Shown: piece after piece, positions 38,746 through 57,149 of the stretch
Numbering within the stretch: the first letter of the stretch is position 1
Layout of the letters: every line of letters begins with the position of its first letter
Position numbers and translations under genes: made by a program
Virus record (IMG/VR): IMGVR_UViG_3300042367_000228
Coordinates: 186,001-250,000 of that record
Direction: 5' to 3' (one strand)
DNA length: 64,000 bases
Notes under the pieces: model-generated
What the model was told of the DNA's origin: nothing
What the model saw: the letters and a program-made list of their open reading frames with translations, nothing else
The model's database searches: none

Positions 38746-39207
38746 CTATACATGCCAAATTTCAGCAAAGCCTTCTTCTTCAGATGGCATTTGAAAAATA
38801 CTAGTCATCGATGCAATAACTGCATCGGATATGTTTTTGCCTGGACGACTTGCTAATCGTCTTGTAAGTTCATCAGGGTCTGGTGTAGAAAATACTACAG
38901 CAATCTTTTTATAACATAGAAACAGTTTTAACTTGTTAGCTCGCGACTTAACTGTTAAATTAGTTTGATCCCATATTGCATCGGTTTCTGCCACATTTGT
39001 AGTGATTGCTCGTTTGTTTAATAGTTGAGTTGCAGTTTTAACATAATCATCAAAAACTTCATTGTATGTTTTTCCAACTGACACTGCATACTCCTCTATA
39101 AACTTGTCTGAGCTAAGATACACACAATTCTTAGCCCAACTTTGATTGTTAACCCATGTAGACTTACCTGAACCAGGTACACCTACTAACATATAAAGTG
39201 TATTCAT
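38746..39207 (-). CDS. Polynucleotide kinase-like P-loop protein (AAA_33)
   Basis: GVPGSGKST, SSD, DQTNL, RxxxR lid. Confidence 0.8.
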   Translation of the reverse strand: MNTLYMLVGVPGSGKSTWVNNQSWAKNCVYLSSDKFIEEYAVSVGKTYNEVFDDYVKTATQLLNKRAITTNVAETDAIWDQTNLTVKSRANKLKLFLCYKKIAVVFSTPDPDELTRRLASRPGKNISDAVIASMTSIFQMPSEEEGFAEIWHV

Positions 39208-41142: not shown

Positions 41143-42555
41143 TTAGACCGCGTAGCGATCGTTCATAATTGTTTGTAACATAATTGCTTGTGGAGTAAAG
41201 TCATCCATATCAGCTGCAAGTACACTTGTCATAATACTTGGACTAAATCCACTTACTAATGCTGCACCTTTTGCATTATACTTAACTGGCACATTGTCAT
41301 GTGAGTTTAAGTTCCAAAATACAACTTGTGGTACTGTATACCCTGCATCTTCATACTTACGACGAATCATTTTTATTGCAGAATCATCATGTGTTACACA
41401 AGCATCAAATTGCATATCAGATAATATTAAAAGTATCTGTGGCATTTCTTCAACAGGTACATTACCATTAACTGCAACTTCTAAAATCTTAGAAAAAGCT
41501 GCATGTAAGTTAGTGCCCATTTGCCAATCACTTTTTGACATCTGCGCATACTTCTCAACTATATTACCTTTTAGTGTAACTAACTCTGGTTTAGAGCTAA
41601 ATGTTAAGAATGTGTCTTTAAACTTACCAGCATTTTTATCTGCTAAGTATATTCCTAAAGATAATGAAACATCCATACATGTAACAGTTTTGCTTTTACC
41701 TGCAGGACAGCCCATAGAACCTGATACATCAACTAATGGTAAAATACTTGCATCACCGACATAGTTAGGTAACGCGTCCCATTGTGCAATAATGTGTTGT
41801 TTTTCAAGTAGTGATGGTTGAGACCACCAACCACCTAACCCCTTAACAATTTCATATGGATAGATCGCACCTGCGTTAACTTTAACAGTTGGATCATCAC
41901 CTTTAACTAATTTAGCAATGTATTCAGCATACTTATCAGTGTGACGAGCAAATGCTTTTTTGTAGCGTGAAGAAGCTACAGATGGAACATGGCTAAAGTT
42001 AATAGCGTCCCATTGGTTAGCACACATTTGTGTTTCAACTACTTTAGTAAGTGAAACAAGTGTTTTGCGATAACGTTTTGGAGACCAACCTAAGTAGTTA
42101 CGTAATTGTACAGCAGTATCTCCTTTACGTGGAATCCATTTAGCAGCAAGTCCATTTTGCGCTTCTAATGCATCTTTAATTAATCCAAATGCATAGTCCT
42201 TTAAGTTTTGTGTTTTGAACACAAGTAAGTCATCGTAGCGACCGAGTTCAGGAACTTTAGCTGCAAGTTTTTTAGCAGCATCTGGATCTGAGTTTTCAAG
42301 ATGTAATAAAATATCTCTAAACAACTGACGTTCACCTGCACCGCCACGTACATCACGTACCCAAGCTGCAATACGTAATGCAAGATCTCTATCTTCTACA
42401 TAAGCAGCAACAAACTCTGGGGTGATGTTTTTCCCACGTGATGCACCTGCCTTAAAGAAGAGATCAACTAATGCACTTGAGGTTGATTTACGTGCTTTCA
42501 TACCGTTTTCAGTACGTGCTTCTTGATTTGCTATTGCTTCAATAAATGTTGACAT
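41143..42555 (-). CDS. TROVE/vWA-domain protein (Ro60/Rsr-like, DUF2828-type)
   Basis: N-terminal TENG..VDLFF..RDVRGGAGER..GRYDDL..AAKWIPR helical region; C-terminal vWA with MIDAS DVSGS, T (MGTN) and SDMQFD. Confidence 0.8.
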   Translation of the reverse strand: MSTFIEAIANQEARTENGMKARKSTSSALVDLFFKAGASRGKNITPEFVAAYVEDRDLALRIAAWVRDVRGGAGERQLFRDILLHLENSDPDAAKKLAAKVPELGRYDDLLVFKTQNLKDYAFGLIKDALEAQNGLAAKWIPRKGDTAVQLRNYLGWSPKRYRKTLVSLTKVVETQMCANQWDAINFSHVPSVASSRYKKAFARHTDKYAEYIAKLVKGDDPTVKVNAGAIYPYEIVKGLGGWWSQPSLLEKQHIIAQWDALPNYVGDASILPLVDVSGSMGCPAGKSKTVTCMDVSLSLGIYLADKNAGKFKDTFLTFSSKPELVTLKGNIVEKYAQMSKSDWQMGTNLHAAFSKILEVAVNGNVPVEEMPQILLILSDMQFDACVTHDDSAIKMIRRKYEDAGYTVPQVVFWNLNSHDNVPVKYNAKGAALVSGFSPSIMTSVLAADMDDFTPQAIMLQTIMNDRYAV

Positions 42556-42566
42556 ATTATTCTCCT

Positions 42567-42601
42567 CAGTTTATGTTGTGTTTTGTGCTGTTAATAAACT
42601 T
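42567..42601 (-). promoter_or_regulatory. Payload-less Y-like stem element in the 5' UTR of the TROVE gene
   Basis: AGTTTAT-TA-ACAGCAC..ATAAACTG directly followed by AGGAG RBS and ATG. Confidence 0.6.
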
Positions 42602-42617
42602 ATTGTTTATGCTGTGT

Positions 42618-42645
42618 ATTATACACTAAAAAAAGTATTTGTCAA
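42618..42645 (-). promoter_or_regulatory. sigma70-type promoter of TROVE gene
   Basis: TTGACA-16 nt-TATAAT. Confidence 0.8.
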
Positions 42646-42683
42646 CTATTTTTTAGAGAATAAAAAACCGCGTATTAAGCGGT

Positions 42684-42854
42684 TTATTCTTCTTCAAATT
42701 CAAATTCCCAACCTTCTGGCATGTTACTTCCTATCCAGTTAGCTTTTTCTAATGTAATCTCACCGGATGCTAATTTTTGTTGAGTTGTTGCAAAAATTTC
42801 TGCAAGATTATCTGGGTCAAGTGTAAAAAATACATCGTCGTCTTTATCGGACAT
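42684..42854 (-). CDS. Small acidic hypothetical protein (not in ORF track)
   Basis: GAGG RBS; MSDKDDDVFF...EFEEE; followed by terminator-like hairpin 42665-42685. Confidence 0.55.
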   Translation of the reverse strand: MSDKDDDVFFTLDPDNLAEIFATTQQKLASGEITLEKANWIGSNMPEGWEFEFEEE

Positions 42855-42889: not shown

Positions 42890-43029
42890 CAGGATAGTTT
42901 GGGCGTTTAGTTGTTTATTTTACAGTCGAGCATTGCCCCTCGACTGATGCTTGCACAATGACTGCTAGTGCAAGCTAATTAGAAAGCTAGTTCTTAGACC
43001 AGCAAATTCTGTTTGCTGAACCTATCCTA
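42890..43029 (-). ncRNA. Y-like RNA with multi-hairpin payload
   Basis: TAGGATAG-GT-TCAGCAA..CTATCCTG; internal hairpins GCTTGCAC/GTGCAAGC and CAGTCGAG/CTCGACTG. Confidence 0.65.
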
Positions 43030-43036
43030 TTTTTAA

Positions 43037-43135
43037 CGGTATAGTAGTTCTTACTTTTTTTATACTAGGTAAAGAGTCCTAGGGTTGTCTGTGACACCAC
43101 AGACCAGCCATAGTTGTGTTGCAGTATCTATACCA
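43037..43135 (-). ncRNA. Y-like RNA with two-hairpin payload
   Basis: TGGTATAG-AT-ACTGCAA..CTATACCG; hairpins GTCTGTG/CACAGAC and CTAGG/CCTAG. Confidence 0.65.
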
Positions 43136-43140
43136 AACTG

Positions 43141-43749
43141 TTAACCAACTTTCATTACAAAGTTGATTATAAATCTATTTTTATTAAATCTTGGATTTGA
43201 TGAAGCATGAAATCTATCTGATTCAAAAATTACTGCTCTGTTTCGTTTAGGTGTGACACGTTGATTAAGTGTTAATTGGGTTGGTGGTTGTCCACTAACT
43301 GGATCCCAGAATTCATTAAACAAGAATGTATCGCCGTCTGAATCGTTTACATAGTAAATCATACTGTAATGAGATCCAGTTTTATCATCAGTATGTGGAA
43401 AATTATAATGATCAGCTGATGCATTTGATTGTTTTAATAATAAGTTAACTTTAACTCGATCAACAGAACAAATATCTTTTTCAACGTGTTCACCTGCAGT
43501 AAATACTACTGCTTTAAGTCTTTCAAAATAATCTTTAAACTTAGATTCTTCAGTATATGACGAATTTAATAATGTACAAACAAACTGTCCATAGTCTTCA
43601 CAATTGTCATCTATAACAAATGATACATCACCGTATTGATCAGCTGATGATGTTTTTTCTTTGTATTTGTACATTAATTCAGTTTCAAGTTCATACTGAA
43701 TTTGATTAGCATACATTATTGGTAAAAAATTATCAATTACTTTAATCAT
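43141..43749 (-). CDS. 2OG-Fe(II) oxygenase-like protein
   Basis: PHTD..YYVNDSDGDT..PKRNR...F....FHAS....RFIIN. Confidence 0.75.
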   Translation of the reverse strand: MIKVIDNFLPIMYANQIQYELETELMYKYKEKTSSADQYGDVSFVIDDNCEDYGQFVCTLLNSSYTEESKFKDYFERLKAVVFTAGEHVEKDICSVDRVKVNLLLKQSNASADHYNFPHTDDKTGSHYSMIYYVNDSDGDTFLFNEFWDPVSGQPPTQLTLNQRVTPKRNRAVIFESDRFHASSNPRFNKNRFIINFVMKVG

Positions 43750-44024
43750 TAACCGGTACGTTGAATTAAATGCCAACCAAACTGAGTTTGTACTGGTTTA
43801 CTAAAGTTACCAATGCCTAACGAAAATGCTGCTTCTTCAAATGGTTGAACCATTTGTCCTCGACCAAATGCGCCTAAGTTTCCACCACTTTGACCACTTG
43901 GACATTTACTATTGGTTAATGCTAACGCACCGAAATCTGCACCTTCGTTAACAATTTTATTGTATAAGTCATTTGCTTGTTCTTCAGTTTCTACTAAAAT
44001 GTGTTTTGCTTGAATTGATGTCAT
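43749..44024 (-). CDS. ppiC: Parvulin-type peptidyl-prolyl isomerase
   Basis: AKHILV, SKCPSG..GG.LG.F.RGQMV.PFE.AAF, PVQTQFGWHLI. Confidence 0.92.
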   Translation of the reverse strand: MTSIQAKHILVETEEQANDLYNKIVNEGADFGALALTNSKCPSGQSGGNLGAFGRGQMVQPFEEAAFSLGIGNFSKPVQTQFGWHLIQRTG

Positions 44025-44035
44025 ATTATTTCTCT

Positions 44036-44605
44036 TTAAAATTCGTAATATAAGTTAAAAGTATTAATACCGGTTTCTAATTGATTATTTTGAAAGTCAG
44101 TTTTCTCATTATATATAGGAGTTGATGCCATTTCTTGTAATGAGCTAACTTCATATGTCCACCACTTGCTAGTTTGACGATATGGAGTTCCGTAGGAGTC
44201 AAATGGAATCTCAATAGTTGATCCGCTGTTTTCGTATGCAAATCTTGGAATTACAAAATAATAAAACTTATCAAAAATTCTATCATAAACTTGTACACGT
44301 AATCCGCCAGTTTTATTTTTAAAAGAACTTATAGGAGCACTATAAGTAGTATTAAAGTTTCGACGTCTAACTGTAACCATTTTGCAATCAGAACCATCGG
44401 ATAAATCTGCAAAATCTTTTGATATTACAGTTTGTCCTCCAAGATTTGCTACTGCATATTCTAATGCAGTTGATACTTGAATTAACCCGTAACTTTGCAA
44501 AATACCAAAAGTTTTTTTGCACATTTCTTCCCACTGTGGAAGAAACTCTTTAATATTATCAAGATGTGCATTTTCTAACTCAAGATTTTCTAACTTATTT
44601 GCCAT
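44036..44605 (-). CDS. Hypothetical protein, possible PD-(D/E)XK nuclease
   Basis: E..V...DLSDGSDCK pattern. Confidence 0.55.
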   Translation of the reverse strand: MANKLENLELENAHLDNIKEFLPQWEEMCKKTFGILQSYGLIQVSTALEYAVANLGGQTVISKDFADLSDGSDCKMVTVRRRNFNTTYSAPISSFKNKTGGLRVQVYDRIFDKFYYFVIPRFAYENSGSTIEIPFDSYGTPYRQTSKWWTYEVSSLQEMASTPIYNEKTDFQNNQLETGINTFNLYYEF

Positions 44606-44630
44606 ATGTTGCCTATATGTAATAGTTAAT

Positions 44631-44662
44631 TGGAGCGGGAGACTAGTGTTATCTAGTATCCC
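44631..44662 (-). pseudogene. Remnant 3' end of a tRNA-Gly-like gene
   Basis: ...CTAGTCTCCCGCTCCA (Gly-type acceptor 3' strand, U73, CCA) with no 5' half. Confidence 0.5.
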
Positions 44663-44684
44663 TAAGTTATGTATAAATAATAGC

Positions 44685-45437
44685 ATGAATCTATTATTTT
44701 GTCAATGCTGTAATGCATCTTTTATTCCAAAAGCAGGATCTCTTGGAAAGTTTTGTTCTTTATCATGCTCGTCTCGGCATAATAACAAACTTAGTACTGA
44801 AAAGAAAATTTCTAAATACATGTTAAATCCTCTAGCATGCAACTGTTGTAATAAATCGTTAGCATATGAAAAACGTAAAAATAAATTTTGTTCTAATCGA
44901 TGCGCTGCTATAGTTTCTAATAAGGTTGAACGAAAACGTGGACCAACACCTAAAGAAAAACTACTATATTCAAAAGTAAAATTTTATTTATGTACACATA
45001 CTAACAAGTGGTATGTAAATCGAAATCCTAACGGTACTGTGCGTCGTTCATCGCCATATATTAAATCCGAAAAAGAAAAATATTACGCTGCATCAAGATT
45101 TAAATTTAACGTGTATCACTTTCCTAACGAGTTTAATTTGTCTTTAATCGAAACTCACGGGTGGTATACGTGCCCAGGTAAAAAACGATCAACCTTCCCT
45201 AAAAACTTATTAGGTGTAAGCAGAGATCACATTATATCAGTTAGCTACGGATTTGCAAATAATATCGATCCTGCTATTATATCGCATCCTGCTAATTGTA
45301 GAATTGTTCTACAATCAGATAATAAGAAAAAACATTCTACTTGTGATATAACTTTATCTGAACTATTACAAAAAATTATTATATGGGATCAAAAATACAG
45401 TGAGCGACGTACCGGGCTCGAACCGGTCTTGTTCTAA
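44685..45437 (+). CDS. Free-standing HNH-family endonuclease with N-terminal Zn fingers
   Basis: KFCSxxC repeats; SRDHIISV..HPANCRI...DN.KK; TATAAATA directly upstream; 3' end overlaps tRNA-Gly antisense. Confidence 0.7.
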   Translation: MNLLFCQCCNASFIPKAGSLGKFCSLSCSSRHNNKLSTEKKISKYMLNPLACNCCNKSLAYEKRKNKFCSNRCAAIVSNKVERKRGPTPKEKLLYSKVKFYLCTHTNKWYVNRNPNGTVRRSSPYIKSEKEKYYAASRFKFNVYHFPNEFNLSLIETHGWYTCPGKKRSTFPKNLLGVSRDHIISVSYGFANNIDPAIISHPANCRIVLQSDNKKKHSTCDITLSELLQKIIIWDQKYSERRTGLEPVLF

Positions 45438-45476
45438 CTTGGAAGGATAGTGCCATACCTACTAGGCGAACGTCGC
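45403..45476 (-). tRNA. tRNA-Gly(UCC), CCA not encoded
   Basis: Acceptor GCGACGT/ACGTCGC, loop CT-TCC-AA, T arm ACCGG-TTCGAGC-CCGGT; one mismatch in anticodon stem. Confidence 0.8.
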
Positions 45477-45501
45477 TCACTGTACTCTTTTTCTAAAATA
45501 A

Positions 45502-45557
45502 CTGGATGCATTTTAAATTTCATGGAAAGAAAGTTTAAAGTTGCAGTTAGCATCCAA
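45502..45557 (-). ncRNA. Y-like RNA carrying a Gly(UCC)-like anticodon stem-loop
   Basis: TTGGATGC-TA-ACTGCAA..GCATCCAG; TTTC-TTTCCAT-GAAA. Confidence 0.65.
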
Positions 45558-45581
45558 AACTGTTGTATGCAAATACTATAA

Positions 45582-45632
45582 CTGAATGCATTAAATTCAC
45601 CATTGAAAGTAATAATTGCTGTTAGCATTCAA
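45582..45632 (-). ncRNA. Y-like RNA carrying a Glu(UUC)-like anticodon stem-loop
   Basis: TTGAATGC-TA-ACAGCAA..GCATTCAG; TTATTA-CTTTCAA-TGGTGA (weak, GU-rich stem). Confidence 0.62.
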
Positions 45633-45657
45633 AAACTATAGTATTCGCGTACTATGT

Positions 45658-45734
45658 TGGTCGGGATAACACGATTCGAACATGCGACCTGACCGCCCCA
45701 AACGGCCCGCTCTACCAAACTGAGCTACATCCCG
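45658..45734 (-). tRNA. tRNA-Pro(UGG)
   Basis: Full cloverleaf CGGGATG..TT-TGG-GG..TATCCCG-A-CCA. Confidence 0.92.
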
Positions 45735-45770
45735 GTAATTTGTTTAAACTGTTGTTTAACTAATGCGTGT

Positions 45771-45798
45771 ATTATACATTGTTTTATGTATTTGTCAA
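45771..45798 (-). promoter_or_regulatory. sigma70-type promoter for tRNA-Pro / Y-like RNAs / tRNA-Gly
   Basis: TTGACA-16 nt-TATAAT. Confidence 0.75.
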
Positions 45799-45822
45799 CT
45801 ATTAATTAAACCTTTTTGTATT

Positions 45823-45907
45823 TGGAGCCAGGTAGGAGACTCGAACTCCTGATGGGTTTCCCCGACGGATTACAAATCCGTTGCAATGGCCACTATGCGA
45901 ACCTGGC
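45823..45907 (-). tRNA. tRNA-Thr(UGU) with long variable arm
   Basis: GCCAGGT/ACCTGGC-T-CCA; ACGGA-TTTGTAA-TCCGT; variable arm GGG-GAAA-CCC. Confidence 0.8.
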
Positions 45908-46011
45908 AAATATAACTATTACTAAAACACTTGATATTTAGTGCTTTAGTAATAGCTATCATTTAAAAATGACAACTACTACACTTTCGTTAATGGAGAA
46001 AGTTTTCTGTT

Positions 46012-46315
46012 GTTTAATGGTGTGCTTTTACGCTAAAGACCTGTCTGCGACATCCTAATTAACTCTCGGACATGTTAAGTTTAACTATTAGGAAAAACAT
46101 CCTTAACATTAGGGGGTACCTCCCTCATCCGTTTAATATAGCAATCACTTTAGACTCGTAACAGCCATTAAGGCATATTGCCGGACTCTATATTAACGCA
46201 GTTACATACACTTACAGGTTGCTTTCGCACTGCCGTAAGTTTAAGTATCACTTTAGCAAAGTTTGCGGGTCACTCTTTAAATGATGGCTGCTTATAAGCC
46301 TACATCCCAATAAAC
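46012..46315 (-). ncRNA. 23S rRNA L11-binding domain (H43/H44) mimic with ~238-nt insertion
   Basis: GGATGTAGGCTTATAAGCAGCCATCATTTAAAGAGT ... GCGTAAAAGCACAC closed by GTTTATTGG/CCATTAAAC. Confidence 0.75.
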
Positions 46316-46639
46316 TTATGTTAATGCAATCAATCTATCAATGTTTTGTTCCATTAATAGCTTGATTCTATCTTTATCAAAATTGTTATTTTGTAAACAG
46401 TTTTGATGTTGTAATCTAAACAAAGTTTCTTTTGCTTCGTCATATATTGATAATGCCCATATCTGCGTACCACAAAACCCACTTGCAGCTAACTTGATCA
46501 TTTGCCATCCGTCACCTTTGATAAACGAATGTTTTCGTTCAAGTTCAGGACCAACATATTTTCTTAGAAACTCATGTGTATCTGATATTCTATTTTCATA
46601 GTCTTCATTATACATTACATTTCCATATATTACTAACAT
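46316..46639 (-). CDS. Hypothetical protein
   Basis: 107-aa ORF with AAGG RBS. Confidence 0.6.
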   Translation of the reverse strand: MLVIYGNVMYNEDYENRISDTHEFLRKYVGPELERKHSFIKGDGWQMIKLAASGFCGTQIWALSIYDEAKETLFRLQHQNCLQNNNFDKDRIKLLMEQNIDRLIALT

Positions 46640-46693
46640 TAGAAACCTTTGTTTAAATTGTTAAATGGGGTAACTGCCTTTACGGTAGCATCC

Positions 46694-47344
46694 TTATTTG
46701 TTATATGTTATTTTTCTACCTTTATACCATCCTTCTGGAATATTAGTAGTTTTAGGAATGGATTTATTTTCAATTCCGTTTGTAATCCACATTTTACCAT
46801 ATTGAGAATTTTTATTTCCTTTTTGATGAATAGAACTTTTTTCACCAATAAGTTTCTTAGTATGTTCAGAATGTGTTTTACCATTAAATGTACCAGACCT
46901 ACCTTTTAATGAATCTGATATTTTTTTAGATATTAACGCAGCAAAAACTGGATCTTCTTTTTTGCGATTTTCAAGAGTAATTTTCCCTCGTGCAAAGTTA
47001 TCTTTTACATTAGAAGTATATCCATTATTTCCATACAAATTCTTTTTATTGTTGTTTATATAATCAAAGCCGCCACGACCGCCTATTTTAATATTATAAG
47101 TTCTAGTACTAGCAACAAATGATTCGTTTACTATTTCAGCTTCTTTATCATACATTTCTTTTGAATTATTAAAAACATGCAATATTTGTTTACTAAACTT
47201 TTCAATACCGTATTTTATTTTAGCTCGATTTAAAATCTTACCTGATCCCATATAATCATCATTTATGTCTAATGTTTTATGACAACCTATATAGATTTTA
47301 TTATTAATGATATTTGTAATTTTGTATATTATGTAATAAGTCAT
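46694..47344 (-). CDS. GIY-YIG homing endonuclease (Seg-like) with NUMOD3
   Basis: YIIYKITN.INNKIYIG.H..Y.GSG; TYN.K.GG.GG; GKTHSEHTK. Confidence 0.85.
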   Translation of the reverse strand: MTYYIIYKITNIINNKIYIGCHKTLDINDDYMGSGKILNRAKIKYGIEKFSKQILHVFNNSKEMYDKEAEIVNESFVASTRTYNIKIGGRGGFDYINNNKKNLYGNNGYTSNVKDNFARGKITLENRKKEDPVFAALISKKISDSLKGRSGTFNGKTHSEHTKKLIGEKSSIHQKGNKNSQYGKMWITNGIENKSIPKTTNIPEGWYKGRKITYNK

Positions 47345-47457
47345 GCATTTAGTGTTAGTAAGGTGTTAACACCTTACTAATCCAATTATTCTTTTAGGAT
47401 AATGATTTAACGTGCGGAACTTTTATAAAGCATCCTAAACCACACAAACATACTAAT

Positions 47458-47532
47458 TGGCGTCGCTACGGGGAATTGAACCCCGGTTGCAAGGATGAAA
47501 ACCTTGTGTCCTAACCACTAGACGATAGCGAC
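47458..47532 (-). tRNA. tRNA-Glu(UUC)
   Basis: GTCGCTA/TAGCGAC-G-CCA; CAAGG-TTTTCAT-CCTTG. Confidence 0.92.
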
Positions 47533-47538
47533 ATATAT

Positions 47539-47622
47539 TGGTGGAGATCCCTGGATTCGAACCAGGTGCCCAGAGGGCATGGATTTACAGTCCACTGCAG
47601 TCGCCAATGCCGCTCGACCTCC
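47539..47622 (-). tRNA. tRNA-Tyr(GUA)
   Basis: GGAGGTC/GATCTCC-A-CCA; GTGGA-CTGTAAA-TCCAT; long variable arm. Confidence 0.9.
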
Positions 47623-47634
47623 GACGTTCTTTAT

Positions 47635-47868
47635 TTATACAAGTTCTGCATGATTAGTTGTAGTTGTGACTAAATCTAACACACCTATTTTTTTAGCACG
47701 ATTTTCTAAAAGTACAATTCTGTTACGAATTTTATTTTTATCACGTCCACGACCTGCTTTTTCAAGTGCTGTCTTAGCTTGAGCTAAGTTTAGCAATTTA
47801 AGTCTAGGTCTGCCATTACGTGTTACTTTTGGATCTGCAGTTCTATTTGCTTTACTGATGTTCGCCAT
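47635..47868 (-). CDS. Small basic hypothetical protein
   Basis: AAGGA RBS; Arg/Lys rich. Confidence 0.6.
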   Translation of the reverse strand: MANISKANRTADPKVTRNGRPRLKLLNLAQAKTALEKAGRGRDKNKIRNRIVLLENRAKKIGVLDLVTTTTNHAELV

Positions 47869-48034
47869 CTTGTGTTCCTTTATCTAAATTTTCGTTATTA
47901 GCATGACTGCCGTGTGAGTTTGAAATGATTTCTGTTTTGGGTTCTTCTTTCTTACCAAAAATCTTATCCCAGTTATCATCAAACTGAGATTTGCTAACGC
48001 TTAATGGTCTTGCTCTACTGCCTTTACCTGCCAT
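47852..48034 (-). CDS. Small conserved phage hypothetical protein
   Basis: MAGKGSRARP..FDDNWDKIF; AGGAG RBS. Confidence 0.65.
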   Translation of the reverse strand: MAGKGSRARPLSVSKSQFDDNWDKIFGKKEEPKTEIISNSHGSHANNENLDKGTQDGEHQ

Positions 48035-48050
48035 AATAATCTCCTTTTGT

Positions 48051-48154
48051 TATATTAGAACACACTACAATAACGGAGTCGAACCGTATACTAAATTGCG
48101 ATTTAGTAGTGAACCGCACTACGTTGATCAGACGCTGTAGTATGCTTTAATATA
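48051..48154 (-). ncRNA. tRNA-like RNA on a long closing stem
   Basis: Three hairpins including T-arm ACGG-TTCGACT-CCGT inside a ~20-bp terminal helix; no CCA. Confidence 0.5.
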
Positions 48155-48164
48155 ACAACTTTAA

Positions 48165-48250
48165 CAGAATAGCTTGCTCACCATTGAGCATTATCGCTAA
48201 GATAGCAATAATGGAATCGAACCATTAAATAATTTGCTGTGACTATTCTA
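48165..48250 (-). ncRNA. YrlA-like RNA (permuted tRNA domain)
   Basis: TAGAATAG-TC-ACAGCAA; T arm ATGG-TTCGATT-CCAT; closed acceptor TATTGCTA/TAGCGATA; D arm GCTC-AATGGT-GAGC; CTATTCTG. Confidence 0.8.
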
Positions 48251-48257
48251 AAATTAA

Positions 48258-48317
48258 CAGGATAGAATTTACTTTTAGATTAAGAGTCCAATGTAAATTG
48301 TTGCTGTTACTATCCTA
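48258..48317 (-). ncRNA. Y-like RNA carrying a Lys(CUU) anticodon stem-loop
   Basis: TAGGATAG-TA-ACAGCAA; AATTTAC/GTAAATT; TTGGA-CTCTTAA-TCTAA; CTATCCTG. Confidence 0.72.
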
Positions 48318-48323
48318 AAACTG

Positions 48324-48536
48324 TTAAGTCCAAACCAATCTTGCTATTGTAGCTTGCTTTGGATCTTTAAATTGAAATATTATTATGTGAGTAGTGTCTG
48401 TTCGTCCACAATGATATTTATAATCAACTTCGTGTACTAAATTGCGTTCCTTGCACCATTTTGATATTTCAAATGCTCTTTTTACATCCCCTGTAAATGT
48501 AGCAAATCCTTCTGCATGTGCGTAATCTGTATTCAT
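48324..48536 (-). CDS. Small hypothetical protein (C-terminal F..L.W family)
   Basis: AAGG RBS; ends FKDPKQATIARLVWT. Confidence 0.6.
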   Translation of the reverse strand: MNTDYAHAEGFATFTGDVKRAFEISKWCKERNLVHEVDYKYHCGRTDTTHIIIFQFKDPKQATIARLVWT

Positions 48537-48555
48537 AGTTACCTTATGTGTTTAT

Positions 48556-48679
48556 CAGAATGCATTTTATTTACCAGTGCGTCTACTCTTTCGCCAAATG
48601 CAATATTGCATTGCAGGACTTGCACCTGCACATCGTTAGATACCGGTTTCCATTAAATTATGATGCAGTTAGCATTCTA
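48556..48679 (-). ncRNA. YrlA-like RNA (permuted class II/Leu-like tRNA domain)
   Basis: TAGAATGC-TA-ACTGCAT; ACCGG/CTGGT stem; short variable hairpin; GCAGG-TGCAAGT-CCTGC; AATGCAA/TTGCATT; GGCGAAAGAGTAGACGC D arm; GCATTCTG. Confidence 0.8.
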
Positions 48680-48686
48680 AATATAG

Positions 48687-48805
48687 CAGGATCCGTTTAA
48701 TATACGCGCTCTAACCGTTAAGCTAACTGTTATTACTAACAGTGTAGGATTCGAACCTACATCACGTGCTTCAAATGCAAATTATTTTATGCTGTTTAGA
48801 TCCTA
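48687..48805 (-). ncRNA. YrlA-like RNA (permuted tRNA domain)
   Basis: TAGGATCT-AA-ACAGCAT; GTAGG-TTCGAAT-CCTAC; ACTGTTA-GTAA-TAACAGT; TA-GCTT-AACGGTTA-GAGC; GGATCCTG. Confidence 0.82.
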
Positions 48806-48818
48806 AAACTTTTAAAAC

Positions 48819-49061
48819 TTATTAAAAAGAACCTTGTAAAGTTTTGGTTTCATCGAGCTGATGCGGTCAACGTTTTACAGACGCCCTTTACTAGTTCCGC
48901 CAACATGACTACCATAGTAACTAGAATCAAAGCACTGTAATTGCCTGAAACTCTCACTCATTACAACTTGCAGTCTATAACTACCCACTGTGCCCCTTCC
49001 GGAGAACACGTTGTGCTTGCTTGCGCAAAAGTTTTTTCAGTAGTTGGGTTCTTTTTAATAA
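48819..49061 (-). ncRNA. Unknown ~240-nt structured RNA
   Basis: Perfect 15-bp terminal stem TTATTAAAAAGAACC/GGTTCTTTTTAATAA around a GC-richer ORF-free core. Confidence 0.55.
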
Positions 49062-49070
49062 ACTTTTTAA

Positions 49071-49147
49071 CAGGTTCCACATAGTGTTACAAATATGTAC
49101 GGAACATCTTTTCCGCACTTCTGCAATGTATTGCTGTAGGAAACCTA
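49071..49147 (-). ncRNA. Y-like RNA with single-hairpin payload
   Basis: TAGGTTTC-CT-ACAGCAA..GTGCGGAA/TTCCGTAC..GGAACCTG. Confidence 0.68.
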
Positions 49148-49160
49148 AAAAACTATTTAA

Positions 49161-49215
49161 CAGAATGTATTTTAGTCATATTCAAAAATGATGTTAAGTT
49201 GCTGTTAACATTCTA
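49161..49215 (-). ncRNA. Short Y-like RNA (possible Gln(UUG)-like loop)
   Basis: TAGAATGT-TA-ACAGCAA..TCAT-TTTTGAAT-ATGA..ACATTCTG. Confidence 0.65.
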
Positions 49216-49220
49216 AAACT

Positions 49221-49249
49221 ATTGTACTACGTAACTAACTGCTTGTCAA
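49221..49249 (-). promoter_or_regulatory. sigma70-type promoter starting at the first base of a Y-like RNA
   Basis: TTGACA-17 nt-TACAAT; predicted +1 falls at ~49214. Confidence 0.75.
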
Positions 49250-49282
49250 CACTTTTTTTTTAATTTTTTTAAGGAGTTTTAA

Positions 49283-49396
49283 CAGGTTTCACAATTTTGA
49301 TCAATTACTCTACCAACTGAGCTAATGTTACAAGTAACATGCAGGAATCGAACCTGCGACACACTGAGATATTAAATTGTTGCTGTAGGAAACCTA
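49283..49396 (-). ncRNA. YrlA-like RNA (permuted tRNA domain, Lys/Asn-like arms)
   Basis: TAGGTTTC-CT-ACAGCAA; TCAGT/ATTGA; GCAGG-TTCGATT-CCTGC; ATGTTAC/GTAACAT; TA-GCTC-AGTTGGTA-GAGT; GAAACCTG. Confidence 0.85.
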
Positions 49397-49407: not shown

Positions 49408-49713
49408 CTAATCTCTTAGGATAGCTAATACTTCATCTTCACGCATAATGATAACTTCATCATCATGTAATTTAATAGGCTCTCCAGCGTGCTTTCCGTA
49501 TAACACTTTATCGCCAATTGCAACTTTTATTTCTCGGAACTGACCATTATCCATATGTTTCCCTGTTCCTATTGCTAGTACTGTTCCAATTACAGATTTC
49601 TCTTTTGAAACAGGTGCAATTAAAATACCACCTTCCGTTATACTTTCTGCAGGATCTTGTCTTACAACAATACGATCGTGCAAAGGAATTACGTTTTCTT
49701 GTGTTACTGCCAT
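49408..49713 (-). CDS. groES: Co-chaperonin GroES
   Basis: PLHDRIVV, TEGGILI, GTVLAIGTG, VAIGDKVLYGK, IMREDEVLAI. Confidence 0.92.
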   Translation of the reverse strand: MAVTQENVIPLHDRIVVRQDPAESITEGGILIAPVSKEKSVIGTVLAIGTGKHMDNGQFREIKVAIGDKVLYGKHAGEPIKLHDDEVIIMREDEVLAILRD

Positions 49714-50038
49714 GTTGTGTACCTTTGTTGTTTAGTATGTGCATATTATACACTAATAAAATTGTTTGTCAAGTGTTTTTTATTCTTTTGGATATAACAT
49801 TTCACCAATAAGTAAACAACCAAACGATAATATTAAGTAATCAATAGGTGACAACAGGTATCCACTATCATGTATATACATTAATAAAGTTACATAAAAC
49901 AATATACCTGCTGCTAACCCTTTATTGATCATTTCTTTAACTCATCCAGTCTTTGTATCTCCTTGAAAGCTGCAACTGTTTTAGTAATTGCAATTCCAAA
50001 TAAAGTTCCTACTGCTAACGCTATCGGTACTAGTGGCA

Positions 50039-50424: not shown

Positions 50425-51528
50425 TTACATTTCCTCTTGGGCTAAAAACCATGTACGTGCTACATATTTAACTCTTGTTATTACATCTTTGATTTCTAGA
50501 TGGCTAGCAACAAGTGTATCAGTTTCTTCTTTAACAACATCGTCTGCAATCCATTTTAAGAATACAGGAGTGCTTTTAGGTTCAATACTGATGTTGTTTA
50601 CTTTTAAGTATTCTAAACCTTGAGTAAGTCTAGATTCAGTAACTACTGTATCAGCAAACTCGTTAATGGAGTTAACTTTTTCTACATCAACACTTGCTAG
50701 TGTTTTAACTTTAGATGAACTGTGTTTTTCACCTTTAACTTTAAACATAAATCGTGATTGTTCATAACCAGGAGTAACACATTTCCAAACAATACCTTCA
50801 CCTACACCTTCAACACCAAAGTGTTGAGCAATTGGACATTGTTGTTCTACTGCAACAGTAAGATCCGCAAGCTTGTTTTGCGCAAGCTCAGGTTCGTTAA
50901 AGTTGATATCCATTGTGTATGTTTGGAAGTCATAAATTGTAAATAAATTTTCAGGCCATGCTTCGGTATTAAAACCTGCAATTTCTTTAGCATACGCAAT
51001 AGTATGCTTAAACTCAGTTGGAGTAAAATAAACGCGTTGAACATCTTCGTCTTCATTTTTACCAGCTGACCATGCAACAATGCCAAAGATAATAAACATT
51101 TTAGGAACATTACTAATTCCTACACCTTTTTGAACACCTTGCCCGCACCATTCGCCAAAGATAGAATAATGTGTTAAGTTGTAATCAACTTTGTGATGTG
51201 CAGCTGAAGTTAATAAGTTAATAAACGTTTCTTTATGTTGTTGTGCATATTTTGCCCAACCATAATTGTCATCATCTATTGTTAAAATACGTTCACGTGA
51301 TTGCGCCCAAAATTCATTATATTTAGGAAACTCGCAAGCAACGCTAGCATTAGTGCCATGTGCCTTAACAGAACCTTCAAACGTTAAAGTTGGCATAGGT
51401 GCAAATGGATCAAAGGTTGGTGCACCATTGTCATCTAACCCTTTAAAGGTAGCACGACTTTTAACTTCTCTAACTACTTGTCTAAATTGATTAATGCTGG
51501 GCCATGATTTGTGTACTTGTTTTGACAT
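50425..51528 (-). CDS. RNA ligase, Rnl2 family
   Basis: KAHGTN (motif I), QSR, FGEWCG (III), FG (IIIa), EGIVW (IV), FKVK (V) plus C-terminal Rnl2 domain. Confidence 0.85.
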   Translation of the reverse strand: MSKQVHKSWPSINQFRQVVREVKSRATFKGLDDNGAPTFDPFAPMPTLTFEGSVKAHGTNASVACEFPKYNEFWAQSRERILTIDDDNYGWAKYAQQHKETFINLLTSAAHHKVDYNLTHYSIFGEWCGQGVQKGVGISNVPKMFIIFGIVAWSAGKNEDEDVQRVYFTPTEFKHTIAYAKEIAGFNTEAWPENLFTIYDFQTYTMDINFNEPELAQNKLADLTVAVEQQCPIAQHFGVEGVGEGIVWKCVTPGYEQSRFMFKVKGEKHSSSKVKTLASVDVEKVNSINEFADTVVTESRLTQGLEYLKVNNISIEPKSTPVFLKWIADDVVKEETDTLVASHLEIKDVITRVKYVARTWFLAQEEM

Positions 51529-55421: not shown

Positions 55422-56615
55422 ATGAAAATACAAGAAATTATAAGCGAAGCAATATCAGGTGCTCACTGGATACACGGATTGCACAATGGGTTAAATGATA
55501 TTTTAGAACAACCGTTAGGACTTACATTTAACTTAGAAACTATAAATGGATTTAATGCCATTGCAGTATACCTTAAAGATATGTCCGACGGCAGGATATG
55601 TAGTTTTTATGAGAAAATGCAACCTAGTGATATTATTTACATGTTAGAAGAGATAGTAAAGATAGCACATTATGTTATACAGCAGAAATATGCTAAAGTG
55701 TGCGCGGATGTAAGTGGAACAAACTTTTCTCATATTCAAATTCTACCTCAGTCTAATAATCCAGGAGCCCTCGCCTCGGCTGGTTATGACTATGTAACAT
55801 TCTATGAAACTGATAAGAATGCTTTCCAACATCGAGATATAGATATGCTAAAAGACTTGTTATATAGTACAGAAGCAATGACTGATGTTAACAGAGGATG
55901 GAGTAATGCTGAACAAAAGAATCTATATGTGCCTGTGATAACTGATATGTTTCAAATCGAACCTGCATTTAGAAATTTGAAACTAGGTGATTTTAGTTTA
56001 GCTGAATTCTTCTTAGACACTAAAAACATAGATACTATGGTTCACGAATTAGTACATATTAGACAACACGCACCTCAATCTAGATATAAAACTAAACGAG
56101 TATTTGATAAAGATACTAAACAGCACAAATTGGTTACTAAACAAGGCACTGAATTTAGAAGTAAAGTAGAGCCAAATCAAGAAAAGTTTTATAATGCAAT
56201 TAGAGATTTAGATAAGTCGCCTGAAAACTATAAAATATATAGTTCGTCGTTACAAGAAATACCAGCACATGCGCATGATGCAGCAGTTAGCGTTATACGT
56301 CATTTAGATTTTGCATGGGGCGGTTCGGTTGATGAATATGGCAGAGACGTGTCACATTTAAAATCTCAAGTAAAAGCACTTAAATTGATTATTGCTAATT
56401 TGTCTAATGGACCAACCGCGTTAAAAGATGTTTATGGTCACCCGATTAAAATTAGAAGATTTGAATATTTCAGTAAGACATTTAATCATCCTAACGATAA
56501 AAAGTTATATCCGGTATATAAAAAATTTGTAAAAATAATGAGTCAAGAATTAATCAATTATTACAATTATTGGAATGAAAAACTTATTAACCTTAGTAAA
56601 TCAAATGGTCAATAA
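55422..56615 (+). CDS. Hypothetical protein with HExxH motif and MKIQEIISE leader
   Basis: VHELVHIRQ followed by Y....QEIPAH (zincin-like). Confidence 0.65.
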   Translation: MKIQEIISEAISGAHWIHGLHNGLNDILEQPLGLTFNLETINGFNAIAVYLKDMSDGRICSFYEKMQPSDIIYMLEEIVKIAHYVIQQKYAKVCADVSGTNFSHIQILPQSNNPGALASAGYDYVTFYETDKNAFQHRDIDMLKDLLYSTEAMTDVNRGWSNAEQKNLYVPVITDMFQIEPAFRNLKLGDFSLAEFFLDTKNIDTMVHELVHIRQHAPQSRYKTKRVFDKDTKQHKLVTKQGTEFRSKVEPNQEKFYNAIRDLDKSPENYKIYSSSLQEIPAHAHDAAVSVIRHLDFAWGGSVDEYGRDVSHLKSQVKALKLIIANLSNGPTALKDVYGHPIKIRRFEYFSKTFNHPNDKKLYPVYKKFVKIMSQELINYYNYWNEKLINLSKSNGQ

Positions 56616-56638
56616 AAAAGCTGCCCTAAGGCAGCTTT
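56615..56638. terminator. Intrinsic terminator between tmRNA and convergent CDS
   Basis: AAAAAAGCTGCC-CTAA-GGCAGCTTT. Confidence 0.8.
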
Positions 56639-56641
56639 AGT

Positions 56642-56983
56642 TGTATTTTGGTTAATAAGGCATACATGCCCCAGAGGGGTAGGTTATTAAGCTACCATGT
56701 CAGCTGCTTCCAAAGAGAAGTCAACTGTCATATACTCGAATTTAGATGCTTTTGCGTCTATAAGTTTTGCGCTGTTTAGGACAGTCACCTCACCTGTTGC
56801 CGTCTCCATTATCTCACCAAGTCGAATCCAATTCATCCCCATTATAAAACACACTATCACTTCCCATTTGAGGGGCAGGAAGTCTACGGCTGTTGCCCCA
56901 CTCCGATACCTCTAATGTGTTTTATGGTGGAGATGTGGGGTTTCGAACCCCAGTGTTTGATGCCGTCACTTTGAAGGAATTAC
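56642..56983 (-). ncRNA. ssrA: Permuted two-piece tmRNA
   Basis: Acceptor piece ends GGGGTTCGAAACCCCACATCTCCACCA (56925); coding piece starts GGGGATGAATTGGATTCGAC (56840); G3.U70 pair; tag frame 56755-56687 AKASKFEYMTVDFSLEAADMVA followed by two TAA stops. Confidence 0.88.
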
Positions 56984-57039
56984 AACAATAATAAACACAC
57001 TAAAATATTTAATGTGCTTATTATTGTTAACTTGTGCAT

Positions 57040-57067
57040 ATTATAACATAAAAATAATATTTGTCAA
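57040..57067 (-). promoter_or_regulatory. sigma70-type promoter of tmRNA
   Basis: TTGACA-16 nt-TATAAT. Confidence 0.78.
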
Positions 57068-57149
57068 GTGTTAATGATAAATAAAAATGTAGTTCACGAT
57101 GCGCTAACATCTAACTACTCTAAACATTTTTAACTTTTAAGGAACAACA

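What the first reader, a model, noticed from the sequence alone, without database searches (positions are those of the whole stretch)
42556..42645. Empty copy of the RNA handle abuts the TROVE gene's own ribosome-binding site
Seen: between a TTGACA-16-TATAAT promoter and the ATG lies AGTTTAT-TA-ACAGCAC-AAAACACAAC-ATAAACT-GAGGAG-AATAAT-ATG. This is the same stem plus motif with no payload, and its terminal G is the first base of the Shine-Dalgarno. Inference: free protein binds its own leader and represses translation, matching protein level to the RNA pool. It is also the strongest internal evidence linking the RNA family to this protein.
Basis: partly seen in the sequence, partly recalled or inferred. 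Interest (0 to 1): 0.8.

Follow-up and report, generated by a model that had tools for sequence, protein, structure and literature searches.

The report
Ro-like gene leader mimics its RNAs
A jumbo phage's Ro60-like RNA-binding protein gene carries, right against its ribosome-binding site, a cargo-less copy of the stem-and-motif "handle" shared by the phage's own small RNAs. This handle sits there in about 95% of related phages, so the protein probably throttles its own synthesis, although no experiment has tested that.

Summary
On the minus strand, a 12/12 TTGACA-16-TATAAT promoter (42645-42618) drives a ~55-nt leader. Positions 42601-42567 read AAG-UUUAU | UAACAGCAC | 10 nt | AUAAA-CUG, and the last G starts the GAGGAG Shine-Dalgarno, 6 nt before the ATG (42555).

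This is the same handle ([U/A]AG, 5 covarying pairs, NNN-CAGCA, ..., CUG) that flanks at least 10 small RNAs at 42890-49396. Two of those are YrlA-like below Rfam's cut-off.

The 470-aa product is Pfam DUF2828+DUF7788, not classical TROVE. Its model's top five PDB matches are all Ro60/TROVE entries, and it is the genome's only such gene.

Six close relatives keep all 25 handle positions, while 7 of 10 loop positions vary. In 137 of 144 distinct homologue upstream regions, a handle unit ends 10-31 nt before the start codon. Handles with ≤20 nt between their arms are almost confined to that position (10/120 leader units against 1/342 elsewhere).

So this is a selected cis element. Autogenous translational repression is the best-fitting mechanism, but binding and repression are untested. 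A processing or co-production role remains a real rival. It would be a new variant of mimicry-based autoregulation, not found described for Ro/Y-RNA systems in four searches of the held papers.

The parts
42665..42685 (-). Intrinsic-terminator-like hairpin plus U-run that closes the upstream small ORF and insulates the Ro-like gene
   Evidence: 7 pairs, 4 G-C, U-run. Its core is invariant in six relatives.
42618..42645 (-). Sigma-70-type promoter, TTGACA-16-TATAAT
   Evidence: 12/12. It is one of four copies of a promoter family; the others precede the tRNA cluster, groES and the tmRNA (family D5). It is conserved in close relatives.
42556..42612 (-). Predicted 5' untranslated leader (~55 nt)
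   Evidence: The start is inferred from the -10 position (sequence). A metatranscriptome contig spans 42063-42631, so leader and 5' coding region lie on one RNA-library contig. That contig also runs past the predicted start.
42594..42601 (-). Handle 5' strand, A-AG-UUUAU
   Evidence: Pairs with 42574-42567. Invariant in six relatives. Same register as the family's UAG-N5.
42585..42593 (-). Handle motif UAACAGCAC (family consensus NNN-CAGCA-A)
   Evidence: Invariant in six relatives. C-GCA is invariant in the 51 aligned family units, although that set was chosen with a pattern requiring it.
42575..42584 (-). 10-nt variable loop in the place where family members carry their cargo
   Evidence: 7 of 10 positions differ among six relatives. 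It is too short for the hairpins or tRNA-like modules of other units.
42567..42574 (-). Handle 3' strand, AUAAA-CUG
   Evidence: Invariant in six relatives. CUG is invariant in the family. Its G is the first base of the Shine-Dalgarno.
42562..42567 (-). Shine-Dalgarno GAGGAG, 6 nt before the ATG
   Evidence: Sequence. Invariant in relatives.
41143..42555 (-). Gene for the 470-aa Ro60-like protein (helical ring part plus vWA domain carrying a DxSxS metal-site motif)
   Evidence: Pfam DUF2828 and DUF7788. PHROG 850 'RNA-binding protein'. AlphaFold model with pLDDT 75, whose top five PDB matches are all Ro60/TROVE entries, E 2e-8 to 7e-5 over the full length. DVSGS is invariant. It is the only such gene in the complete genome.
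42890..43029 (-). Nearest full unit of the RNA family (116-nt cargo)
   Evidence: Depth is 81-90 in RNA libraries against 10-19 for the gene. An adapter-joined end lies one base after its CUG.
48165..49396 (-). Array of seven family units, two with tRNA-like (YrlA-like) cargo
   Evidence: Rfam YrlA scores 38.9 and 32.3 bits, below the gathering score of 69.
45502..45632 (-). Two further small units between tRNA-Pro and tRNA-Gly
   Evidence: (42.6 and 41.9 bits).

Best explanation
The 35-nt element at 42601-42567 is an operator in the mRNA of the phage's single Ro60-like protein. It reproduces the basal stem and CAGCA bulge motif that this protein is inferred to recognise on the phage's Y-RNA-like small RNAs, but it carries no cargo.

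Proposed mechanism:
- When the protein exceeds the free small RNAs, it binds the leader handle.
- The handle's 3' strand ends in the first base of the Shine-Dalgarno, 12 nt before the AUG, so a bound ~53-kDa ring would keep the 30S subunit off the site.
- When small RNAs are in excess, they titrate the protein away and translation resumes.

Shown: the element's presence, its family membership, purifying selection on stem and motif but not loop, its position against the ribosome-binding site across relatives, and the Ro60-like fold.

Inferred: that this protein binds the handle, that binding blocks initiation, and the titration logic.
For: 1. Family membership.
- The leader fits the register [U/A]AG-N5-N3-CAGCA...N5'-CUG.
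- It ranks directly behind the true units with two independent models.

2. Selection.
- The 25 handle positions are invariant and 7 of 10 loop positions are variable across six relatives down to 80% protein identity.
- The competing upstream hairpin is deleted in L009.

3. Position in homologues.
- 137 of 144 distinct homologue upstream regions (54-100% identity) have a handle unit whose CUG lies 10-31 nt before the start codon.
- The same holds in cyanophage BUCT-ZZ01 at 50% identity and Campylobacter phage CPX at 37%.
- 14 of the 137 have a sigma-70-like promoter immediately before the unit, so there the unit is the 5' UTR.

4. The handle, not the cargo, is what is kept here.
- Handles with ≤20 nt between the arms make up 10 of 120 distinct leader-position units, against 1 of 342 elsewhere (Fisher 9e-6, about 7 lineages, not corrected for phylogeny).
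- L187 and L224 carry the evident homologue UAGGUUAU-UAACAGCAA...AUAACCUG fused to AGGAAA or AAAGGAAA. A G-C to U-A compensatory change separates it from the window's copy.
- L095 and L164 keep a ~30-nt payload on that same handle. By eye it contains a short hairpin, but no tool folded it.
- Jumbo phages PHA46 and XbC2 (39-40% identity) have an NAG-N5...N5'-CUG hairpin fused to AGAGG or AGAAGG. Its 5' loop motif is conserved and the rest of the loop varies.

5. The protein as partner.
- Ro60/TROVE fold and the sole such gene in a complete genome.
- The RNA model hits 3/3 whole genomes of DUF2828-encoding phages and 0/4 lacking it.
- It also finds units beside the gene in four of eight more such phages: P100, EFDG1 and CPX, with PJN02 weaker.
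- A phage Ro60 has been shown to bind Y-like RNAs encoded just upstream of its gene (PMC12135203).

6. Rationale.
- A consensus promoter plus a consensus Shine-Dalgarno would give very high expression unless it is restrained after transcription.
Against: - There is no binding or expression data.
- In most relatives the leader unit is a full-strength, cargo-bearing unit: median 38.8 bits against 38.5 for non-leader units. It could simply be excised as a small RNA.
- Units also sit shortly before other ORFs in this window. The unit at 43029-42890 lies 35 nt before the ORF starting at 42854, and a variant unit lies before the ORF at 48034.
- The feature is not universal. No handle is seen in the leaders of EFDG1, PJN02, Sf14 or mycobacteriophage Silverleaf.
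- The stem is marginal on its own (-2.0 kcal/mol).
- The leaders of PHA46, XbC2 and L108 have CAACA where the family has the otherwise invariant CAGCA. They may not be bound at all.
- The handle motif differs from the experimentally known Ro-binding motif (GNCGAA, PMC4201824).
Confidence: 0.5

Rival explanations
1. Co-production and processing. The handle marks the boundaries at which units are cut or trimmed out of longer transcripts, and the Ro-like gene is simply the last cistron of an RNA-plus-mRNA transcript. The leader copy then serves as a maturation or stability signal for the mRNA's 5' end, or as a leftover cutting site, with no feedback on translation.
For: - In most relatives an array of units runs straight into the gene with no room for a promoter.
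- Leader units there are ordinary full-strength units.
- The unit at 43029-42890 has a defined end one base after its CUG and 5-8 times the depth of neighbouring mRNA in RNA libraries.
- Inter-unit linkers are A/U-rich single strands, the kind cut by RNase E (established knowledge).
- Y-like RNAs encoded directly upstream of a phage Ro60 gene are already known (PMC12135203).
Against: - It does not explain why the handle is kept and the cargo repeatedly lost specifically in the leader position.
- It does not explain why stem and motif stay invariant behind a dedicated promoter and terminator.
- A cut at the equivalent place would sever the mRNA inside or at the Shine-Dalgarno.
- One RNA-library contig carries leader and coding region together, though this is weak evidence.
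Confidence: 0.25
2. Positive or assembly role. Protein bound at the leader stabilises the mRNA, or opens a weak helix that otherwise pairs ACAUA (42577-42573) with the start-codon region. Alternatively, it loads nascent protein onto RNA.
For: - The minimum-energy fold of the full leader contains a 5-pair helix across the AUG that competes with the handle's 3' strand.
- In PHA46 the hairpin lies within a few nucleotides of the predicted transcript start. In bacteria, 5'-terminal hairpins can protect mRNAs (established knowledge).
Against: - All these structures are worth only 2-3 kcal/mol and are no better than shuffled sequence.
- Positive autoregulation with a consensus promoter and Shine-Dalgarno has no obvious purpose.
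- In the window, about 9 nt precede the hairpin.
Confidence: 0.1
3. The handle is read by some other factor (a host or phage nuclease, a chaperone or a modification enzyme), and the Ro-like protein recognises another part of the RNAs. The leader copy then reports to that other factor.
For: - The handle motif CAGCAA is unlike the known Ro-binding CGAA motif (PMC4201824, PMC12135203).
- Nothing here tests binding.
Against: - The handle is the only feature common to all units, whose cargoes differ completely.
- The family travels with the DUF2828 gene across very different phages and is absent from four phages lacking it.
Confidence: 0.1
4. A decaying relic of a former unit, or a chance resemblance, with no function.
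For: - The covariance-model score is weak (15.3 bits, window-wide E about 1).
- There are two departures from near-invariant positions.
Against: - The conservation pattern.
- Recurrence in about seven lineages, and position specificity.
- Low chance expectation.
Confidence: 0.05

Closest known systems
Ro60 (Rsr) with Y RNAs / YrlA in bacteria and phages, including Thermus phage phiLo Ro60 with Yrl1 and Yrl2 (PMC4201824, PMC12135203)
   Same: - A ring-plus-vWA protein fold.
- Small RNAs whose 5' and 3' ends pair into a stem next to a conserved bulge motif.
- tRNA-like cargo in some units, with weak YrlA hits.
- RNA genes sit directly upstream of the protein gene.
- RNA ligase and a kinase lie nearby.
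   Different: - The protein is Pfam DUF2828+DUF7788, not TROVE.
- The bulge motif is CAGCAA, not GNCGAA.
- There are many units per genome, many with short anticodon-arm-like cargo.
- No leader copy of the binding site, and no autoregulation, was found described for Ro/Y systems in the four literature searches run on the held library.
Autogenous translational repression by molecular mimicry (ribosomal proteins L1, S8, L20, S15; threonyl-tRNA synthetase with its tRNA-like leader; phage T4 gp32 and RegA; MS2 coat protein). Established knowledge, not tested here.
   Same: An mRNA site that resembles the protein's main RNA ligand lies on or next to the ribosome-binding site. The expected logic is that free protein represses and the primary ligand competes.
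   Different: Binding and repression are not demonstrated here. The primary ligand would be a whole library of modular small RNAs rather than rRNA or tRNA.
Phage Bas63 gp130, a Ro60-like protein that counters the Ppl defence system and lies upstream of tRNA genes (bioRxiv 10.1101/2024.10.10.617714)
   Same: A phage Ro60-like protein encoded next to tRNA-type genes. In the Felix-O1-like phage Sf14, the model finds weak family units among the tRNAs just downstream of its DUF2828 gene.
   Different: I did not verify homology between gp130 and this protein. No handle is seen in the Sf14 leader. The paper does not describe an RNA handle or a leader element.

Membership tests
Ro60/TROVE protein family | Ring of helical repeats followed by a vWA domain with a metal-ion site | tested here: met
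   The AlphaFold model (pLDDT 75) has Ro60/TROVE entries as its top five Foldseek PDB matches: 9kop, 9l5y, 2nvo and 2i91 chains A and B. E-values are 2e-8 to 7e-5, the alignments are about 505 columns long, and TM is about 0.5 for the phage entries. The DVSGS motif is invariant.
Ro60/TROVE protein family | Sequence match to Pfam TROVE (PF05731), or to a solved Ro60 | tested here: not met
   Pfam gives DUF2828 and DUF7788 only. There is no PF05731 match anywhere in the genome. phmmer against PDB sequences finds nothing at E ≤ 10.
Y RNA / YrlA | Rfam YrlA (RF02553) match at the gathering score | tested here: not met
   Two units score 38.9 and 32.3 bits against a gathering score of 69. The leader itself has no Rfam match.
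Y RNA / YrlA | Conserved Ro-binding motif GNCGAAN0-1G (or GGUCCGA) on the 5' strand of the terminal stem (PMC4201824) | tested here: not met
   The conserved 5'-side motif is NNN-CAGCA-A. No CGAA is visible at that position in the 51 aligned handles or in the leader. I checked this by eye and ran no dedicated search.
Y RNA / YrlA | Terminal stem formed by the 5' and 3' ends next to a bulge, encoded beside the Ro gene | tested here: met
   An 8-pair stem with 5 covarying pairs. A unit lies adjacent to the gene in 137 of 144 upstream regions. An RNA end lies one base after the CUG.
Autogenous translational operator by mimicry | The mRNA site resembles the protein's primary RNA ligand | tested here: met
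   The leader fits the handle register and ranks next after the true units. The assumption that the family RNAs are the protein's ligand is itself inferred.
Autogenous translational operator by mimicry | The site overlaps or abuts the ribosome-binding site | tested here: met
   The G at 42567 is shared by the CUG and GAGGAG. The CUG lies 10-31 nt before the start in homologues, and 11-14 nt in the cargo-less ones.
Autogenous translational operator by mimicry | The protein binds the site and represses its own translation | not testable with these tools
   This needs binding assays, toeprinting and reporter fusions.

The most novel reading that the evidence does not exclude
A widespread phage Ro60-like protein (DUF2828) reads one portable handle: an 8-pair stem plus a CAGCAA bulge. 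That handle is displayed on a library of tRNA-part mimics (anticodon arms, T/D elbows) and, in cargo-less form, on its own mRNA. The empty handle would make protein synthesis track the pool of unbound RNAs. This would be the first autoregulatory circuit for any Ro/Y-RNA particle, and part of a phage tRNA-decoy or tRNA-repair system.
Probability: 0.3. Interest if true: 0.85.

Novelty: new variant of a known kind. Interest (0 to 1): 0.65.

Why it matters
Ro60/Y-RNA particles are found from bacteria to humans and matter in autoimmunity. How cells or viruses balance the protein against its RNAs is not known.

A binding-site copy in the protein's own leader, kept against the ribosome-binding site in ~95% of a large phage clade, gives a concrete hypothesis that is easy to test. 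It also defines a minimal 35-nt candidate binding site for the DUF2828 branch, useful for binding and structural work.

The handle also flags a large, apparently modular RNA family in many cultured phages, including KVP40, P100, CPX, PHA46 and Felix-O1-like phages, where experiments are feasible.

Tried and rejected
AGUUUAU/AUAAACU works as a stem, but the family comparison shows the proper register is [U/A]AG-N5 / N5'-CUG.
- **Pseudoknot between UAACAG and CUGUUA.** It looked possible in a few window units, but it is not kept in units with GUUCAGCAA / CUGUUG or in leader units. Rejected.
- **Riboswitch-like switch between the upstream hairpin (AUAAAC-AAUAA-GUUUAU) and the handle.** The upstream arm is deleted in L009/L010. 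Rejected as a conserved feature.
- **"Leader units are weaker operators than trans units."** This holds only for the cargo-less copies. Overall medians are equal.
- **Sequence searches.** PDB and NCBIfam gave nothing for the protein. DNA search of cultured phages found no close relative.
- **Profile-based locus search.** It returned only the closest 80 loci, so it did not reach distant relatives.
- **Metatranscriptome contigs.** They come from a 90-95% related strain and are assembled contigs, so they could not resolve the leader's ends. One contig runs about 20 nt past the predicted transcript start.
- **Handle-only covariance model.** I did not build one, because it would have required typing many sequences. 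I used a scripted log-odds model instead.

Full report
**1. What is there**

The finding's interval (42556-42645) reads on the minus strand. In order it contains:
- a terminator-like hairpin with a U-run (42685-42665);
- a perfect TTGACA-16-TATAAT promoter (42645-42618, 12/12);
- a leader of about 55 nt;
- GAGGAG (42567-42562), a 6-nt spacer, and the ATG at 42555;
- a 470-codon ORF (42555-41143).

Inside the leader, 42601-42567 reads AAG-UUUAU | UAACAGCAC | 10 nt | AUAAA-CUG. The final G is the first base of GAGGAG.

**2. The RNA family it resembles**

The same strand carries at least ten small-RNA units:
- seven at 49396-48165;
- two at 45632-45502, between tRNA genes;
- one at 43029-42890.

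A lower-scoring variant may lie at 43135-43037.

Each unit has [U]AG, five variable pairs, three variable bases, then CAGCA(A). A cargo of 27-116 nt follows, then the complementary five bases and CUG, usually followed by UU.

I aligned 51 small units from this phage's relatives. RNAalifold returns only this 8-pair stem, and five of its pairs show compensatory changes. A caution: I collected the units with a pattern that demands these features, so their invariance is partly built in.

Independent support for the family:
- There are 286 pattern matches on the gene's strand in the first 69 loci, against about 40 by my rough tally on the other strand.
- The strict pattern matches 14 times in the genome against 1.35 expected.
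- Covariance-model E-values reach 1e-11.

Two units contain a permuted T-arm / acceptor hairpin / D-arm module. They hit Rfam YrlA at 38.9 and 32.3 bits, below the gathering score of 69.

RNA-library contigs from a lake relative cover the 43029-42890 unit at 81-90 depth, against 10-19 for the protein gene. They end, joined to sequencing adapter, one base after its CUG. The units therefore appear to be discrete, abundant RNAs whose ends form the handle.

**3. The protein**

- Pfam assigns DUF2828 and DUF7788, not TROVE.
- PHROG 850 is labelled "RNA-binding protein".
- Sequence search of the PDB finds nothing.
- An AlphaFold model built on 26 homologues has pLDDT 75 and pTM 0.70.
- Its five best PDB matches are all Ro60/TROVE entries: Thermus phage phiLo Ro60 (two entries), Deinococcus Rsr, and two chains of Xenopus Ro60. 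They align over the full length with E from 2e-8 to 7e-5.
- A DxSxS metal-site motif is invariant.

The genome is complete (372 kb with terminal repeats). It has this one DUF2828 gene and no Pfam TROVE gene. "TROVE gene" is thus right at the level of fold but not of Pfam family.

**4. Is the leader copy more than chance?**

- The covariance model (R1) contained no leader of this clade, though it did include full-size leader units of more distant homologues. It places the leader 8th in the window, immediately after seven true units. The score is only 15.3 bits (window-wide E about 1), because the model expects cargo.
- A scripted handle-only log-odds model puts the ten known units in the top ten of the whole genome. 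The leader is 14th at 18.2 bits, and best among hits with a short gap. About three background hits reach that score in 744 kb. My back-of-envelope figure for a given 55-nt leader is about 2e-4; no tool computed it.
- Conservation is the stronger argument. In six distinct relatives down to 80% protein identity, the 25 handle positions never change, 7 of 10 loop positions do, and the region between the -10 box and the handle suffers substitutions and a 5-nt deletion.

**5. Homologues**

Three locus searches gave 229 loci at 54-100% protein identity, with 144 distinct upstream regions of at least 100 nt.
- In 137 of them (95%), a handle unit ends with its CUG 10-31 nt before the start codon. By eye, the Shine-Dalgarno then begins roughly 0-15 nt after the CUG.
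- The seven exceptions score below the cut-off. Three of them have coding-like sequence running into the start; I did not inspect the other four.
- In 14 cases a sigma-70-like promoter sits immediately before the unit, so the unit is the 5' UTR.

The arrangement recurs outside this clade:
- Cyanophage BUCT-ZZ01 (50% identity) has three units, the last 11 nt from GGAG.
- Campylobacter phage CPX (37%) has its last unit 9 nt from AAAGGA.
- KVP40 (43%) has UUACAGCAA 8 nt before GAGGA but no convincing stem.
- PHA46 and XbC2 (39-40%) have an NAG-N5...N5'-CUG hairpin fused to AGAGG or AGAAGG. The 5' loop motif AGUCAACA is conserved and the rest of the loop varies.

No leader handle is seen in EFDG1, PJN02, Sf14 or mycobacteriophage Silverleaf. 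P100 has its last unit about 75 nt upstream.

**6. The handle, not the cargo, is what the leader position keeps**

Handles with at most 20 nt between the arms account for 10 of 120 distinct leader-position units. Elsewhere the count is 1 of 342, and that single case looks like a mis-pairing (Fisher 9e-6, not corrected for phylogeny). The ten come from about seven lineages.

- L187 and L224 carry UAGGUUAU-UAACAGCAA-(10-13 nt)-AUAACCUG fused to AGGAAA or AAAGGAAA. This is plainly the homologue of the window's AAGUUUAU-UAACAGCAC-(10 nt)-AUAAACUG-AGGAG, and a G-C to U-A compensatory change separates them.
- L095 and L164 have that same handle with a ~30-nt payload. By eye it holds a short hairpin, but I did not fold it.

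Cargo has therefore been lost repeatedly, while stem and motif were kept. This is hard to reconcile with the leader unit being only one more small-RNA gene.

**7. Link between RNA family and protein**

- Synteny has been described above.
- R1 finds units in the whole genomes of KVP40, PHA46 and Sf14.
- It also finds units beside the gene in P100, EFDG1 and CPX, and more weakly in PJN02.
- It finds none in T4, T5, phiKZ or SPO1, which also lack DUF2828.

This is a small sample, but it matches the published finding that Y-like RNAs lie next to Ro genes and bind them (PMC4201824, PMC12135203). The conserved motif here (CAGCAA) is not the published CGAA motif, so recognition details must differ.

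**8. Mechanism**

The best fit is autogenous translational repression by mimicry. Free protein binds the empty handle and occludes the Shine-Dalgarno, and family RNAs compete for the protein. The geometry, the selection pattern and the very strong promoter and Shine-Dalgarno all fit.

It remains inference, for these reasons:
- Nothing here shows binding or repression.
- The hairpin is worth only -2 kcal/mol on its own.
- Most relatives carry a full-strength unit that could simply be processed away.
- Units also precede other ORFs.

The main rival is a processing or co-production role. Weaker rivals are activation or stabilisation, a different binding factor, and a functionless relic. I put the operator model at about 0.5.

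**9. Comparison with what is known**

It works like the classic mimicry operators of ribosomal proteins, threonyl-tRNA synthetase and T4 gp32/RegA (established knowledge). The particle is Ro/Y-like in fold and RNA architecture, but it fails Pfam TROVE, the Rfam YrlA threshold and the CGAA motif.

I found no description of a Ro-type protein regulated through a Y-like element in its own leader. This rests on four text searches of the held paper library, so it is not proof of absence. I therefore rate it a new variant of a known kind.

Noticed in passing
Window 48317-48258 and 45557-45502 (minus strand); loci L013, L023, L025, L037, L041 and others: The short cargoes of many family units look like anticodon arms: a 4-5-pair stem with a 7-nt loop of the form YU-NNN-R-N. 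24 of 51 small units fit, against 0.85 expected from shuffled cargo. The anticodon-like triplets are UGU, UGA, CUU, GCA, GUU, UUU, GGU, GUA, CAU, UCU and GGA. With the tRNA-elbow-like cargo of the larger units, the family reads as a library of tRNA-part mimics on one handle. Decoys for anticodon nucleases is a lead from memory only.
   Followed up: partly
Window 49288-49380 and 48676-48789 (minus strand): Two units carry a permuted T-arm / acceptor hairpin / D-arm module. They hit Rfam YrlA at 38.9 and 32.3 bits, below the gathering score of 69.
   Followed up: partly
KVP40 176659-176728 and 177340-177438; PHA46 4283-4353 and 11293-11357; Sf14 14317-14552; P100, EFDG1, CPX and PJN02 upstream regions: The same handle (NAG-N5-NNN-CAGCAA...N5'-CUG) occurs in cultured phages of very different families that encode a DUF2828 protein. 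It is not found in T4, T5, phiKZ or SPO1. In the records I fetched, the units that fall inside the fetched stretches carry no annotation.
   Followed up: partly
Window 42617-42665, 45770-45818, 49744-49792, 57039-57087 (minus strand): Four copies of one near-consensus promoter family drive the Ro-like gene, part of the tRNA cluster, groES and the tmRNA. This looks like a co-regulated translation and RNA-maintenance set.
   Followed up: no
Window 56596-57017 (minus strand): A phage-encoded tmRNA, called permuted by both ARAGORN and Rfam (tmRNA_permuted, 101.9 bits), with an unusually long 22-residue tag.
   Followed up: no
Window 43138-43748, 44029-44609, 44641-45495: RNA-library contigs from a 90-95% related strain skip these three segments. 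The skipped stretches include the 2OG-Fe(II) oxygenase gene and ORFs between the RNA genes, and the third is replaced by 72 other letters. These look like strain-specific insertions among the RNA genes. A homing-endonuclease-like ORF lies nearby at 46694-47344.
   Followed up: no
Window 45910-46315 and 48820-49065 (minus strand): Two stretches of about 400 and 245 nt sit inside the RNA-gene region without a credible ORF and without any Rfam match. They may be further structured RNAs.
   Followed up: no
Leader units in loci such as L031, L032, L041 and L047: The motif variant CCGCA is common in leader-position units (17/77) and rare in other units (2/185). This could be a leader-specific feature or just one clade. 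It is not corrected for phylogeny.
   Followed up: no
Window 38746-39207, 50425-51528, 43749-44024, 49408-49713: Genes around the RNA arrays include an AAA_33-type kinase, an RNA ligase (PF09414), a parvulin-type prolyl isomerase and GroES. The first two fit an RNA-repair context for the Ro-like particle.
   Followed up: no
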